DNA of 64,000 nt from NCBI RefSeq assembly GCF_902652985.1, contig NC_047022.1, forward strand, positions 36,642,001-36,706,000, written 5' to 3'. The notes under the pieces are model-generated. The model made no database searches and was not told the DNA's origin. It was given only the letters and a program-made list of their open reading frames with translations. The DNA is from Pecten maximus (lineage: Eukaryota). This document shows, one piece after another, positions 3,796 to 62,402 of this stretch (the first letter of the stretch is position 1; every line of letters starts with the position of its first letter). Made by a program: the position numbers and the translations under genes.

Positions 3796-6700
3796 TCAAG
3801 GCTCAGGTGTAGTTTTTGTCAAGTTCCAAAGGATATCATCTGATTTTTTGATAGAAACTTTTGAAAGGTCCTTCTCCTCCATTGAAGCTGGTCTTACAGA
3901 TACACACTTCAGTTTTCCACTTCTTCCATCCATAGAGCCAACACACCTAATAAAACAAAATCATTTAATAATGATATGTTGAAATGAACTGTACATTTAT
4001 TCTGTACCATATGATATCCTACATAAACATCTACATATAAACTAGTGATCTAATATTATAAACTTAATCATCCATAGGTGATTTATTACAGGAATTTTAT
4101 TTTAAAGGTTAAGACTTTCCAACATATAATGTCCTTAAAATATTTGCTCTCAGATTATGAGGATAGTGATGTTTTGGGAATATGTTTTTTAAGTTTTTAA
4201 AACCATTTTGTAACCTGTCCATTTCTACATGTCTAAGAAGGATTTATGAGGAATGCACCATAAAATAAAAACTGTTATGTCATATACTTTAAGTTTGTAC
4301 CAGTGGTTAAACTGGAAGTCAATCAAAAAATAAAGTATGTTAATTCTTGATTTTTTCAGTTTAGACAATATTTTTTGTATGGGGTATATTGAAGAACTAG
4401 CACAAATATTATATCTACATTTGTTGAGTAGACACATACCTGTGCCAATGTCCTCGGGTCAGTCTTTGCAGTTGACGATCCTGTTATAAGATGTTATACA
4501 AATGGCATTACACTTTTCTTAGTATTAAAGCAATAAAACAACACAAACAATTATTTCTTGATAACTTGTTACCTAGTTAGATATGAACAAGAGTCAAATA
4601 CAATTGCCACGTTTGGTCAACTGAACAAGAGGATTTGTGGATCAAATTAAGAATGGTAAAATATATCCCAATAAATAATAAAACAGTGGACATCCTGGGC
4701 TTCAACACAAAATAATAATAATGACTGAAGTAGGTAATAGACAACTGATCACTATAATGAATGAAAAAGTCAGTAGCCAATTAGAGGGCAACATTGGCTT
4801 CCTTTGAGTTTGAAACAACCTGAATAACAATCAATAAGGTAATCATTTACACTTACAATTTCGTAGAAAATACATGCCATGGAATCTTCCTCATCTTTAA
4901 TCAGGAATTCTTTTCCTGTTGCTGAAGGATCTTGCATCATGGCCGAGTCCACCACACCTACAGAAGATTCAATTTTAAACATGCTGATGGTCTCTCAACT
5001 ATTTTCAGGGATTTTGATATAAATGTACTTAAATCCTAAACTGGTACGGGTCTGATAAAACAGCAAATGTTTATGATGAACTGCAAATATCAATGCCGAA
5101 CTATTGAACTCAGATTATTATGCCAAATGATCACAACCAATGATGAGTTAATTGGGCCGTTTTACTATAATCCACCAATATCTATTGTTTTGTGGGAAAA
5201 AACACCAGTACATACCAAATACTTCAAAAATCATATTAACAGAATCTCTGTATTTGCTCCAATGCTTGACACCCTGAATGGTTGATGTGATGAGGTGAAG
5301 AGATTTATCAGCTTTTTGGCCAGTCTTCTGTGGTGCTTTCTGTTGTTCCTGAAATATTGATGTATTTAATCAACAGAAACAGTTGAAATGATGACAAGGT
5401 ATACTCCGATTTGAAAGTAGACCTATCGTATACCAAGAGAAAGTATGTGTCCCCAATTAACTTCAAGCATATCAGGATAGAATTTATAATTGAAACAAAA
5501 TGCAGAGATTTATCAGAGTGCTGTACATTCTTTGTGCTTTTTAGGATATCAAAACAAGAAATGTATCAAAATAACAACAAGAAAACAATTTTTAATTATT
5601 ATACAAATTTTCTCATTGAATTTACTTTTTGAATTGTTGATGAAGATATTGTTTTTGAAGAATCTCCAAAACCTCCAACTTGATCTGTCTGGTGTCGAAA
5701 ATGCTGTACAAATTTGTCTGCCTTTTGTGCTGTGGCTGCACCACTGGGGCCTGGTCTGTACAAGTTCTGGTTTCTATGTGTGCTGGTCTGGAATGGGTTC
5801 TGGTTCATATGTGTATTAGTCTTCGAGAAGTTATTTCCAGAATTTTGAGTCTGGCATTGGCTTCCTCCTTGGCCATTGTAGTTCTGTCTACCATTAAAAT
5901 TCCTGCATAAAGTATGTTGGTAAAAACTCAGGATCCAACTTTATAAACAAATTTCATTAAATATTTCCAGAAGAGTTAACTGTCACGGCTAAATTTGCAT
6001 TGTCATGAACACAAGGAGGTAGGAATATTTATTACATTTTTACCAGTGAAATATCAAAAATTATTCATTCTATAAAAGTGATATTATTCACTAGTGAAAA
6101 ATATCACTTTTGCTGATTTGACCAATCAAATTAATGATTAGAAAATACCAAAATAATTGACCAATCAGAAAGCCCGACATATATGTCAGCACCTGGACAG
6201 GGGGAACTACATTTTTTGTTTACAAAGTATTGCTGTAGGCCTAGTTAGCATACGGGGTAGGTTTTTCGTTGATAAAAAATGTAATAAACAGAATATCTAA
6301 CAGTGTCTTCAGTAATACCAAATATATTTCACTCGTGTGGCTAATATTTTGATATTTTTCACTCGTGCTGCGCACTCGTGAAAAATATCAAAATATTAGC
6401 CCCACTCGTGAAATATATTTGGTATTACTGAAGACACTGTTAGATATCCTCTATACATTCCTGTTCTATTTCCAAAGGGACAAAGATTACATTTTGTAGA
6501 CTCTTGAATGGAATTTGAATTGCATAAAAAATGGATAATGTTTTTTAAAAAATATATTTTTAATGCAAACAACGTAAACAATCCTATAGCGCCCATTTTG
6601 AGTACCTACCTGACGATCTACATAGTGTACAAGAGGGGCCAAAACCCAACTCCGCCTATACGAATACTCCGGTTATTTGCATATTTCGTCATGGAAAAAG

Positions 6701-47489: not shown

Positions 47490-48110
47490 AAAATGGCCAC
47501 AATGACTGCCATGTAAAGTTTTTATGAGGCTGAAAAATAACAACACTTTGTTGGCTCTCCTTCCTTAACATTCCTACCAATTTTCAGCCCAATGGTACCA
47601 GTGGAACTGGAGAAGATGTTTAAAATGTATTTTCCAAGATGGTGGCTATGACAGCCATGTTGGATTTCGATTTGACCCAAAAAATAACAACACTTAGTAA
47701 GGACCATCTCAGGATCATTTCATGCAAGTAAGAGCTCAGTCTCTCTGCTGGAACTTGAGAAGAAGTTCAAAATGGGAAAAGTTGAAGCACAGCAGACAGT
47801 GGCCAGCACACGGTGTACAACGATGGACAACAATGACTATAGGTCATCCTTACCGTTCAGGTTTGTTTGTTTGTTTTTGTTTAACGTCCTATTAACAGCC
47901 AAGGTCATTTAAGGACGTGCCAGGTTTTGGAAGTGGAGGAAAGCCGGTGTACCCGGAGAAAAACCACTGGCCTACGGTCAGTACCTGGCAACTGCCCCAC
48001 GTAGGTTTCGAACTCGCAACCCTGAGGTGGAGGGCTAGTGATAAAGTGTCGGGACACCTTAACCACTCGGCCACCGCGGCCCCTTACCCTTCAGGTCAGA
48101 TGACCTAATA
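47490..48110. mobile_element. Degenerate HINE-like non-autonomous element interrupted by a SINE
   Basis: Internal repeats (AAAAATAACAACACTT twice), decayed GACA-type microsatellite, and terminal palindrome TAGGTCATC...GATGACCTA split by the SINE. Confidence 0.5.
47862..48083 (-). mobile_element. Full-length tRNA-derived SINE
   Basis: Minus strand GGGGCCGCGGTGGCCGAGTGGTTAAGG (A box) ... GAGTTCGAAACC (B box), conserved core, (AAAC)n tail; TSD TTACCG/CTTCAGG with one mismatch. Confidence 0.9.
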
Positions 48111-48242: not shown

Positions 48243-48856
48243 ATTCTACCATGTTTGCTATGTAACGCCAGTTTTGATTGGTTAAAAACCATGTATTATT
48301 TTCCAATAACCCACGCTCGTGCCAATAATACACGCTCGTGAGTCACGGCTGTTACAATTTTAAATATCTAATATTCACCTGTTTCATAAAAGGTTACTAT
48401 AGCCGAGTGGGCTAATGGGTTAGTCTTTCAATATATTTTTATCACGACGTGAGTTCGAATCCTACGGAGGCCCCCACTTTTTTTTCTTTTTTTTTCTCCT
48501 TCTTTTTTAATTTTCAAAATCAATGCCATATGATAGATGCTCTTGATCGTAGTACTGTATTGCCTGTATATTTCATCAACAAATAATAATGCAATACTCA
48601 AGAAATAAATTACAAGGTTTCTTTGCTGTTTTTCTATTAGAAAGAGGTCAATCTCAGAACTAAACAGTACATGGTAGAATAGAAATAATCAACTTTGACT
48701 CGTGTATTGTTGCAGGATATACAACTCGGACTCGGATATTTTGCAATTTTAATTAATAACTCAGGCCTGCGGCCTTCGTTATTAATTTAATTGCAAAATA
48801 TCCTCGTCCTCGTTGTATATCCTGCAATAATACACGAATCATCGTTAATTATTTCT
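48243..48856. mobile_element. Non-autonomous element: 12-bp subterminal inverted repeats, internal tRNA-like segment and ~140-bp terminal hairpin
   Basis: Inverted repeats ATTCTACCATGT 48243-48254 and ACATGGTAGAAT 48669-48680; palindrome 48700-48837 centred on TGC 48768-48770. Confidence 0.75.
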
Positions 48857-48985
48857 TAAACAGCCATATCTCAGACATAAGAGGTAAATGATAACATGGT
48901 GACATTTACAGGTGTTTGTGCAGTTTTGTTTTGACAAATGAAGATGCTGTATATTACAGATGGAGATTTAAGAGGTAGTTCCTCG

Positions 48986-62402
<13,417 letters not shown>

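What the first reader, a model, noticed from the sequence alone, without database searches (positions are those of the whole stretch)
48243..48856. A second, sequence-unrelated element has the same hairpin grammar
Seen: 12-bp subterminal inverted repeats, then a ~68-bp-arm hairpin with three TC-opposite-TC interruptions (48726-27/48810-11, 48732-33/48804-05, 48761-62/48776-77) and again a TGC loop (AGGCC-TGC-GGCCT). I see no primary sequence similarity to the 6.0-6.45 kb element, yet layout, G.A tandem pairs and C(GCA)G loop are the same. Inference: a class of mobile elements defined by conserved ssDNA structure rather than sequence. This is the best candidate here for an under-described system.
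Basis: partly seen in the sequence, partly recalled or inferred. Interest (0 to 1): 0.82.

Follow-up and report, generated by a model that had tools for sequence, protein, structure and literature searches.

The report
Scallop rolling-circle mini-transposon, giant coded hairpin
This is one copy of a very abundant, young, non-coding jumping gene built like the known Helitron2/Helentron rolling-circle transposons. Its unusually long end hairpin carries a small tip motif, shared by several unrelated families in this genome, that looks built to fold in only one DNA strand.

Summary
A perfect 12-nt inverted repeat (48243-54 / 48669-80) is followed directly by a 176-nt hairpin (48681-48856). The hairpin has three TC-opposite-TC interruptions and a C-TGC-G loop.

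It is one of about 1,300 copies of a roughly 620-bp non-coding transposon. The best copies differ from their consensus by about 1%. There is no target-site duplication.

The layout is the published signature of Helitron-like group 2 elements (Helitron2/Helentron; non-autonomous forms are called HINE/DINE-1): the 5' terminal repeat is complementary to the stretch just before a 3' hairpin. The class is therefore known, and an earlier follow-up in this scan reached the same filing on other DNA of this genome.

Three things are new here:
- The hairpin is 5-10 times longer than usual.
- Insertion is at A^ATA, which reads TAT^T on the other strand. That is the reverse of the canonical T|T orientation.
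- A tip module recurs in at least three sequence-unrelated families, always in the same orientation: a tandem TC/TC mismatch, a 3-5 bp G+C stem, and a C(TNC)G loop.

Genome-wide, TNC loops in this context are about 5-fold over control, while loops not starting with T show no excess.

No autonomous partner was found. Intact Helentron genes exist, but the four lineages sampled lack such hairpins in the flanks read.

The parts
48243..48859 (+). One full copy of family F2, a non-autonomous element of about 620 bp. This copy lacks 11 nt that the consensus has. Its ends are uncertain by 1 nt because A flanks both sides.
   Evidence: Homology among 20 copies starts at A-TTCTACC and stops after ...TTTCTTA(A). 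At least 1,749 candidate copies; the 40 scored are all full length at 94-96% identity. The best copies are 0.6-1.5% from their consensus.
48243..48254 (+). 5' terminal inverted repeat, 12 nt, 0-1 nt from the end.
   Evidence: 12/12 complementary to 48669-48680 (I15). Invariant in 20 copies.
48303..48340 (+). Two 19-nt direct repeats, each with a CCAAT-like box and a CGCTCGTG motif.
   Evidence: D3 (89% identity). The second repeat resembles the hairpin's 3' arm (I20).
48395..48513 (+). A stretch resembling a tRNA gene's internal promoter (box A-like, then box B-like), followed by a T-rich run. It is probably captured SINE or tRNA-derived sequence. It is present in the main subfamily but absent from subfamily 2b.
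   Evidence: Motifs read. No tRNA called by ARAGORN and no Rfam tRNA hit at E <= 1. Absent from the L068-type subfamily.
48669..48680 (+). 3' subterminal inverted repeat, directly abutting the hairpin.
   Evidence: I15. The junction 22-mer occurs 639 + 651 times in the genome against 0 for the control.
48681..48856 (+). Giant terminal hairpin with arms of 87 and 86 nt.
   Evidence: It is conserved at about 96% in a copy (L070) that is only 78% identical overall.
48759..48779 (+). Tip module: tandem TC/TC mismatch, 5-bp stem ending in GGCC, C-TGC-G loop. On the minus strand this reads as a G.A/A.G tandem and a C-GCA-G triloop.
   Evidence: Mismatch map. The same module occurs in F1, F3 and F4.
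6028..6454 (+). Copy of the unrelated family F1 with the same layout: 5' repeat at 6028-6041, its complement at 6275-6288, then a hairpin of about 170 nt with TC/TC at 5-6 and 35-36 bp from a C-TGC-G loop.
   Evidence: At least 1,783 candidate copies at 97-99% identity.

Best explanation
The element is a non-autonomous Helitron-like transposon of group 2 (Helitron2/Helentron type, HINE-like). A RepHel protein encoded elsewhere (an HUH nuclease fused to a PIF1 helicase) would move it by copying a single strand.

Shown:
- It is a young family of about 1,300 copies with sharp ends.
- It inserts without target duplication at a preferred site: host A on the left and A-T/C-A-A/T on the right.
- Its first 12 nt are complementary to the 12 nt that directly precede a 176-nt terminal hairpin.
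- Two further unrelated families (F1, F3) have the same layout and the same target.

Inferred:
- When the strand is unwound, or when the ends are joined in a circle or tandem intermediate, the two 12-mers pair and extend the hairpin stem. Both cleavage sites then sit together at its foot.
- The hairpin tip is the recognition or nucleation signal for the nuclease.
- The signal works in one strand only. In the minus strand the interruptions are purine-purine (tandem G.A in a pyrimidine-GA-purine context) and the loop is C-GNA-G, both known to be very stable in DNA. In the plus strand they are destabilising T.C/C.T pairs.
- On that minus strand the target reads TTAT^...^T, as in other group-2 elements. 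That would make this a 'reverse' layout with the hairpin at the 5' end.
For: Copy number, ends and no target duplication:
-.
- One copy (L018) lies in a satellite whose intact units read GCGAAACTAACG. The insertion adds only the element, with no duplicated bases.

Layout matches the published definition:
- 5' repeat 0-2 bp from the end, and 3' repeat immediately upstream of the hairpin (PMC3627910; PMC4067079; PMC11417382).

Enzymes are present:
- 92 Helitron_like_N matches, many in open frames of 2,800-3,229 aa.
- One lineage has DUF6570 + Rep + PIF1 + Exo_endo_phos, which is a Helentron. At least 16 Rep lineages exist.

Same machinery for three families:
- F1, F2 and F3 share host A on the left and ATA on the right.

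Strand asymmetry:
- In the three hairpins, pyrimidine-pyrimidine oppositions on the plus strand outnumber purine-purine ones by 21 positions (13 sites) to 2. One-sided binomial on sites gives p of about 0.004, my arithmetic on the list.
- The first tandem TC/TC lies 5-7 bp from the loop in all three, and a second lies at 35-36 bp in F1 and F2.

Loop rule, genome-wide:
- CTCG..C-T[A/C/T]C-G..CTCG occurs 2,218 times against 412 for the control, with recurrent, perfectly complementary tips carrying TTC, TAC and TCC loops.
- The same context with a first loop base other than T occurs 184 times against 162, with no multi-copy family.

Other:
- Joined ends fold into one continuous stem in silico.
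- The stability of d(GCA)/GNA loops depends on a 5'-C...G-3' closing pair (PMC3201870; PMC13037366).
Against: - No autonomous copy with these ends was found. The 3' end of Helentron lineage A carries only a short hairpin. No giant hairpin lies in the 10 kb downstream of lineages B, C and D, or in the 8 kb upstream of A. No sampled Rep locus contains the tip module.
- The target is A|A on the strand where the hairpin is 3', not the T|T reported for group 2.
- The hairpin is far longer than any described.
- The nearest-neighbour model gives the minus strand only about 3 kcal/mol more stability.
- CTCG occurs mostly on one strand: seven times on the plus strand of F2 against one on the minus, including twice outside the hairpin (48313-48340). 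The 'mismatches' could therefore be direct repeats of a protein-binding word rather than G.A pairs.
- The third loop position was not tested genome-wide.
- The F3 map rests on a single, diverged copy.
Confidence: 0.72

Rival explanations
1. This is a single-strand transposon moved by an enzyme other than Helitron RepHel, for example another HUH nuclease or an undescribed protein. The resemblance to group-2 Helitron ends would then be convergent.
For: No partner was found among the four sampled Helentron lineages. Target orientation and hairpin size both depart from the group-2 norm.
Against: The end layout matches the group-2 definition point for point. The genome holds many intact, young RepHel genes, with copies 97-99.8% identical. 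Replitrons have terminal direct repeats instead and are described from plants, algae and protists, not animals (PMC10288648).
Confidence: 0.12
2. This is a cut-and-paste miniature element (MITE or foldback type) moved by a DDE transposase that leaves no visible duplication. The hairpin would be a by-product of palindrome growth, and the TC/TC sites would be protein-binding words read in double-stranded DNA.
For: CTCG occurs mostly on one strand, including outside the hairpin. An unchecked scan note (s1-789168) reports a duplication-less DDE-type element in this genome.
Against: The repeats are asymmetric: one terminal, the other 176 nt from the end. There is no duplication at the one empty site. 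That note's target (AAA^TTT) differs. The third F2 mismatch keeps TC/TC but not CTCG (CTCA / TTCG), and the loop's middle base varies while its outer bases do not. Both points favour structure over a fixed word.
Confidence: 0.08
3. The TC/TC and GNA features have no function. They are leftovers that survive because arm-to-arm correction of hairpins cannot repair tandem G.A pairs.
For: No functional assay exists. Individual copies in the genome are neutral.
Against: The module sits at the same position (5-7 bp from the loop) and in the same orientation in unrelated families. Only TNC loops form multi-copy families. The hairpin stays about 96% identical where the rest of the element has drifted to 78%.
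Confidence: 0.08

Closest known systems
HINE / DINE-1, the non-autonomous Helentrons of mites, mosquitoes and Drosophila; Cg_HINE and 'pearl' in oysters (PMC4067079, PMC7492417)
   Same: Non-coding and high-copy. Inverted repeats of 11-15 nt, one at the 5' end and one just before a 3' palindrome. No target duplication. Found in bivalves.
   Different: Their palindrome stems are reported as 5-10 bp in the mite families, against 72-87 nt arms here. They have T-runs at both ends and a T|T target, against TT...CTTAA ends and an A^ATA target here. They often carry central satellite repeats, which F2 lacks.
Helitron2 elements with asymmetric terminal inverted repeats (Bao and Jurka 2013, PMC3627910); FoHeli1/2 of Fusarium (PMC5148889)
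   Same: The 5' repeat is 0-2 nt from the end and the 3' repeat is immediately upstream of the hairpin. Pairing of the two repeats was proposed to set the end point of replication. The FoHeli1/2 target TNAT^T equals the minus-strand reading here (TTAT^T). The FoHeli1/2 terminal hairpins, as printed in the paper, have C-GAA-G loops.
   Different: Their hairpins are short. Their 5' hairpin involves the terminal repeat, which is not evident here. Their GNA loop is on the conventional top strand at the 5' end.
'HLE2-reverse' (FoHeli3-5) and proto-Helentron (PMC11417382)
   Same: [quoted passage not shown]
   Different: These are known from a fungus and an oomycete and have modest stem-loops. No insertion preference has been established for them. 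Their relation to the scallop families is untested.
DNA mini-hairpins d(GCGNAGC) and d(GCA) triloops; tandem sheared G.A pairs (PMC13037366, PMC3201870; the pyrimidine-GA-purine rule is from my memory of Chou and Reid's work)
   Same: The minus strand of F1 reads exactly GC-GCA-GC at the tip. Every family has the 5'-C...G-3' closing pair that these loops need. Every tandem site is in a pyrimidine-GA-purine context.
   Different: Those are studies on oligonucleotides. None links the motif to Helitron-like elements: no paper in the searchable library holds both 'Helitron' and 'triloop'.
IS200/IS605 (IS608) bacterial single-strand transposons
   Same: Strand-specific imperfect hairpins are recognised by an HUH nuclease. 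Insertion occurs next to a short conserved target with no duplication. Cleavage sites are positioned by base pairing near the hairpin foot.
   Different: These are bacterial, with hairpins at both ends and no helicase. Membership was not tested here.

Membership tests
Helitron-like group 2 (Helitron2/Helentron), non-autonomous | Interspersed multi-copy element with defined ends and no coding capacity | tested here: met
   No Pfam or Rfam family above threshold in the element.
Helitron-like group 2 (Helitron2/Helentron), non-autonomous | No target-site duplication | tested here: met
   One paralogous empty site (the L018 satellite). The flanks of 24 F2 and 13 F1 copies show no repeated bases. 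Only one true empty site was available.
Helitron-like group 2 (Helitron2/Helentron), non-autonomous | Short (8-18 nt) inverted repeat, with the 5' copy 0-4 nt from the terminus | tested here: met
   12 nt at 0-1 nt from the end in F2, 14 nt in F1, 12 nt in F3.
Helitron-like group 2 (Helitron2/Helentron), non-autonomous | 3' copy of the repeat lies immediately upstream of a 3' stem-loop | tested here: met
   No spacer between 48680 and the hairpin's start at 48681. The same holds in F1 and F3.
Helitron-like group 2 (Helitron2/Helentron), non-autonomous | Stem-loop is short, with the 3' repeat 20-60 nt from the 3' end | tested here: not met
   The hairpins are 146-176 nt, so the 3' repeat lies about 150-180 nt from the end.
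Helitron-like group 2 (Helitron2/Helentron), non-autonomous | Insertion between T and T on the strand where the hairpin is 3' | tested here: not met
   On that strand the host bases are A on the left and A-T-A on the right. The T|T reading holds only on the opposite strand.
Helitron-like group 2 (Helitron2/Helentron), non-autonomous | An autonomous RepHel element sharing the repeats and the 3' end | tested here: inconclusive
   Not found in the flanks of four sampled lineages. At least 12 other Rep lineages were not examined.
Helitron-like group 2 (Helitron2/Helentron), non-autonomous | Group-2 RepHel genes (DUF6570 marker) present in the same genome | tested here: met
   DUF6570 + Helitron_like_N + PIF1 + Exo_endo_phos in lineage A. 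DUF6570 in three further lineages, together with Rep in two of them.
Canonical Helitron (group 1) | 5' TC, 3' CTRR, a 16-20 nt hairpin about 11 nt from the end, A|T insertion, no terminal inverted repeats | tested here: not met
   The ends are TT...CTTAA (F2) and TTT...CTAT (F1), inverted repeats are present, and the target is A^ATA.
MITE / foldback cut-and-paste elements | Symmetric terminal inverted repeats flanked by a target duplication | tested here: not met
   The repeats are asymmetric and there is no duplication.
Replitrons | Terminal direct repeats; hosts are plants, algae and protists | tested here: not met
   No terminal direct repeats. Features taken from PMC10288648.

The most novel reading that the evidence does not exclude
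The tip module (a C-GNA-G triloop on a 3-5 bp G+C clamp, bounded by a tandem sheared G.A pair) is a strand-specific single-stranded-DNA recognition element for a group-2 Helitron nuclease. It marks the minus strand as the processed strand. These abundant animal elements would then be 'reverse' group-2 Helitrons with a giant 5' hairpin. The same GNA rule, visible in the published Fusarium ends, may hold across group 2.
Probability: 0.35. Interest if true: 0.65.

Novelty: new variant of a known kind. Interest (0 to 1): 0.5.

Why it matters
How Helitron-like transposases recognise their ends has been tested only on one reconstructed group-1 element. For group 2 the role of the terminal repeats and hairpin is still a hypothesis. 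This genome offers several young, very abundant families whose end hairpins share a compact, strand-asymmetric module with clear rules: G and A of the loop are fixed and the middle base is free, and a tandem purine pair sits 5-7 bp below the loop. That yields short oligonucleotide substrates and point mutations for binding and cleavage assays. It also gives a sequence-level way to tell which strand is processed. In practice, annotation tools that expect short stem-loops and T|T sites will probably miss or misfile these elements as MITEs. Together the families amount to several thousand copies in this genome.

Tried and rejected
Partner hunt:
- I searched for junctions with a different upstream context. 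The four hits were diverged or rearranged copies, not long elements.
- I paired the 5'-end and 3'-junction hits on the first two contigs. The largest spacings were 1.7 and 2.1 kb, and none was of autonomous size.
- I mapped the 3' end of Helentron lineage A from match coordinates. I scanned the downstream flanks of lineages B, C and D and the upstream flank of A. No giant hairpin or tip module turned up.
- Subfamily 2b has an 88-aa open frame (L068:5579-5842). It has no Pfam family and no word hits. The full HMMER search returned only a repetitive artefact and two short weak hits. It gave no lead.

Other dead ends:
- A palindrome census of about 290 kb of fetched sequence found too few other families for a family-level test. 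The other long palindromes found (L013, L018, window 61417-61499) have near-perfect stems and neither TC/TC nor TNC loops.
- The 5'-end count against the 3'-junction count (1,053 against 1,290) shows no strong end bias. Subfamily 2b, which lacks the exact 5' word, accounts for the gap.
- Rfam returned only sub-threshold matches to long-hairpin microRNA precursor models, which carry no meaning here.
- Tables of oyster HINE palindromes were illegible in the held supplement.

Full report
**What is there**

The window is part of a 918-Mb, 3,983-contig animal assembly. An earlier scan note calls the organism the king scallop. The assembly statistics match my memory of the Pecten maximus assembly, but I did not verify this.

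At 48243-48859 lies a sharply bounded repeat:
- The first 12 nt (48243-54) are perfectly complementary to 48669-80.
- That second 12-mer abuts, without spacer, a 176-nt hairpin (48681-48856).
- The hairpin folds at -63 kcal/mol, z = -15.9 against shuffles.

**It is a transposon family**

- The genome holds at least 1,749 candidate matches. The 40 scored are all full length at 94-96% identity to this copy.
- The 22-mer across the repeat/hairpin junction occurs 1,290 times with at most one mismatch, equally on both strands, against 0 for the control. The 5' terminal 22-mer occurs 1,053 times.
- Twenty copies aligned with their flanks lose all similarity exactly before A-TTCTACC and after ...TTTCTTA(A). 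They differ from their consensus by 0.6-1.5%.
- No bases are duplicated at the ends.
- One copy (L018) sits in a satellite whose intact units read GCGAAACTAACG. The interrupted unit is restored by removing the element alone. This is the only true empty site I could obtain.

**Target**

- The host base on the left is A in 24 of 24 F2 copies.
- The four bases on the right are A (22/24), A (20/24), T or C (24/24) and A (24/24), counted after ...CTT-A.
- A conserved T-A lies 7-8 nt upstream of the insertion point: the A in 23/24 F2 copies and in 12/13 F1 copies.
- The exact junction is ambiguous by one base, because A lies on both sides.

**The other element and a third family**

*Family F1.* The element at 6028-6454 has at least 1,783 candidate copies at 97-99% identity, and one fetched copy equals the consensus. 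It has the same plan: a 14-nt terminal repeat, its complement at 6275-88, then a hairpin of about 170 nt. It also has the same flanks: host A on the left in 11 of 13 copies and A-T-A-T on the right.

*Family F3.* A pattern search for the hairpin tip, designed to exclude F1, found a third family. One copy is L074:27-672.
- It has a 12-nt terminal repeat, whose complement directly precedes a 146-nt hairpin.
- It has about 326 candidates at 74-91% identity. Their alignments run from the terminal repeat to 3-4 bases past the hairpin, which implies the same conserved ATA(A) flank.

The three families share no BLAST similarity beyond chance-level matches of 12-19 nt. Three unrelated families with one layout and one target point to one kind of transposition machinery.

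**Classification**

The published definition of Helitron2/Helentron elements ('HLE2') has four parts: short inverted repeats, the 5' one 0-2 nt from the end, the 3' one immediately upstream of the 3' hairpin, and no target duplication (PMC3627910; PMC4067079; PMC11417382). All four are met.

The genome also carries the enzymes:
- There are 92 Helitron_like_N matches, many in open frames of 2,800-3,229 aa.
- They fall into at least 16 lineages, some with copies 97-99.8% identical.
- Lineage A has DUF6570, Rep, PIF1 helicase and an Exo_endo_phos nuclease, which is the Helentron architecture.

Two defining features are not met:
- The hairpin is 5-10 times longer than described.
- On the strand where the hairpin is 3', the target is A|A-T-A rather than T|T.

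Read on the other strand, the target is TTAT^...^T. This is like the TNAT^T of Fusarium FoHeli1/2 (PMC5148889). The hairpin then sits at the 5' end, as in the 'HLE2-reverse' layout (PMC11417382). I cannot decide between 'canonical layout, complementary target' and 'reverse layout, canonical target' without the autonomous partner.

**The partner was not found**

- Lineage A ends 5 kb past its gene with a short hairpin (GGCCC-ATT-GGGCC) 7 nt from the end.
- The 10 kb downstream of lineages B, C and D and the 8 kb upstream of A hold no long hairpin.
- None of the sampled Rep loci contains the tip module.
- Variants of F2 with another context before the junction are old or rearranged copies.
- At least 12 Rep lineages remain unexamined.

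**Subfamilies show what is under constraint**

- A copy 78% identical overall (L070) keeps the hairpin at about 96%.
- An older subfamily (L068 type, about 179 candidates) shares about 120 nt at the 5' end and about 250 nt at the 3' end with F2, but has an unrelated interior. It lacks the tRNA-promoter-like stretch.

So the ends and the hairpin are the conserved, cis-acting part.

**The hairpin 'grammar'**

I mapped every non-Watson-Crick opposition in the three hairpins.
- A tandem TC/TC lies 5-6 (F1), 6-7 (F2) and 5-6 (F3) bp from the loop.
- A second tandem TC/TC lies at 35-36 bp in both F1 and F2, and a third at 41-42 in F2.
- F3 has TTC opposite TC at 51-53.
- With the terminal repeat on the left, pyrimidine-pyrimidine oppositions total 21 positions at 13 sites. 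Purine-purine oppositions total 2.
- If the strands were equivalent, 13 or more of 15 sites on one side has p of about 0.004 (my arithmetic).
- The F3 map comes from one diverged copy, so some of its single mismatches are private.

All three loops are TGC closed by C-G. On the minus strand these features become tandem G.A/A.G in a pyrimidine-GA-purine context and a C-GCA-G triloop. F1 there reads GC-GCA-GC, the 'mini-hairpin' consensus GCGNAGC (PMC13037366). The stability of d(GCA) loops depends on this 5'-C...G-3' closing pair (PMC3201870). The nearest-neighbour model credits the minus strand with only about 3 kcal/mol more. I do not know how well that parameter set handles sheared G.A pairs.

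**Genome-wide test of the loop rule**

- The context CTCG, 1-6 nt, C-T[A/C/T]C-G, 1-6 nt, CTCG occurs 2,218 times against 412 for the reversed control.
- The listed matches are dominated by recurrent tips with perfectly complementary short stems:
  - the F1 stem with TTC (31 in the first 31 Mb) or TAC (8);
  - a GCGCC stem with TAC (about 27, often in tandem clusters);
  - a GGGC stem with TAC;
  - a GGCC stem with TTC;
  - one TCC.
- With TGC and F1 excluded, the same context gives 59 against 21 and yields F3 and a short-hairpin repeat, F4.
- The two-base-stem version with a first loop base other than T gives 184 against 162. The only complementary-stem hits are single copies that look like point mutants of the TNC families.

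So multi-copy families use T-N-C loops (G-N-A on the other strand) with a free middle base. That is the signature of a GNA triloop rather than of a fixed word. I did not test the third loop position, and I could not fetch the TTC and TAC families to see whether they are giant hairpins.

**How it most likely works**

*Shown:* the anatomy, copy number, absence of duplication, shared target, strand asymmetry and loop rule.

*Inferred:*
- A RepHel protein nicks at the element ends and unwinds one strand.
- The two 12-mers pair. If the ends are joined in silico, the 12-mers extend the hairpin into one continuous stem. The junction then lies at the inner edge of the 12-bp segment, with no bulge in F3 and a 2-nt bulge in F2. 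Both cleavage sites thus sit at the hairpin's foot, as Bao and Jurka suggested for these repeats.
- The tip module nucleates folding or is bound by the nuclease, in the strand where it is stable.

A serious alternative for the TC/TC sites is a protein-binding word, CTCG, present as direct repeats. It occurs seven times on the plus strand of F2 against once on the minus strand, and twice outside the hairpin. Against this, the innermost F2 site keeps TC/TC but not CTCG.

**Novelty**

- The class is known.
- An earlier follow-up in this scan (s1-787187) filed five such elements elsewhere in this genome the same way, and I agree.
- Several first-reader notes record the same G.A/GNA observation on other pieces (for example s1-793014 and s1-802763). 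None had a follow-up on that point.
- No paper in the searchable library holds both 'Helitron' and 'triloop'.
- The Fusarium paper prints C-GAA-G terminal hairpins without comment.

I therefore rate this a new variant of a known kind. The tip module and the reversed target orientation are the parts worth a specialist's attention.

Noticed in passing
window 48395-48513: F2 carries box A-like and box B-like motifs at tRNA-gene spacing, followed by a long T-rich run. A related tRNA-derived SINE head lies inverted just upstream at about 48000-48085, 16 nt of it complementary to 48451-66. ARAGORN and Rfam call no tRNA. The stretch is absent from subfamily 2b, so it is probably captured.
   Followed up: partly
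flanks of F1 and F2 copies (L002-L020, L053-L063): Besides the bases at the junction, a conserved T-A lies 7-8 nt upstream of the insertion point (the A in 23/24 and 12/13 copies). In F1 it often appears as GAATA. This extended target signal is shared by two unrelated families.
   Followed up: partly
L060 just past the F1 copy; L070 just past the F2 copy; C11:21860308-21860400; C8:37041771-37041865: Solo pieces made only of the outer arm of the hairpin (the last 36-95 nt of the element, at most from the loop to the end) lie a few to about 180 nt beyond full copies, in all three families. They may be abortive or re-initiated copying events. Their direction could tell which end starts replication.
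   Followed up: no
L068:5579-5842 (G000:C14, subfamily 2b): An 88-aa open frame starts at an ATG in good context, downstream of CCAAT-like boxes. It is kept in an old subfamily of about 179 copies. It has no Pfam family and no credible homologue among 1.8 billion representative proteins.
   Followed up: yes
G000:C1, e.g. 1170850/1170996, 24438644-24438993, 24845423-24845758: The short tip CTCGCGCC-TAC-GGCGCTCG recurs in tandem clusters 140-330 nt apart, roughly 800 copies by extrapolation. It looks like a satellite-type repeat whose monomer carries the same tip module. Its TGC version sits in a 68-nt repeat (L072, L073).
   Followed up: no
L071:300-2260 (G000:C17:18554700-18556660): A tandem array with a 145-bp period lies 4-6 kb upstream of the 3,188-aa Helentron gene of lineage A. 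It recalls the satellite-like central repeats that Helentron-derived elements carry in oysters.
   Followed up: no
window 61417-61499; L013:558-728: Two long, nearly perfect palindromes (39-nt and about 66-nt arms) are each preceded by the same word, TTTAAGCATTGAAC. This is probably another foldback-type repeat family. It has no TC/TC sites and no TNC loop.
   Followed up: no
F1 (window 6119-6170), F2 (48272-48330), F3 (L074:60-70 and 235-246): All three families carry CCAAT-box-like words (ACCAATCA, GCCAATCAGAA) in their 5' third, and F1 and F3 also have a 38-46 nt internal hairpin there. These may be remnants of the partner's promoter.
   Followed up: no
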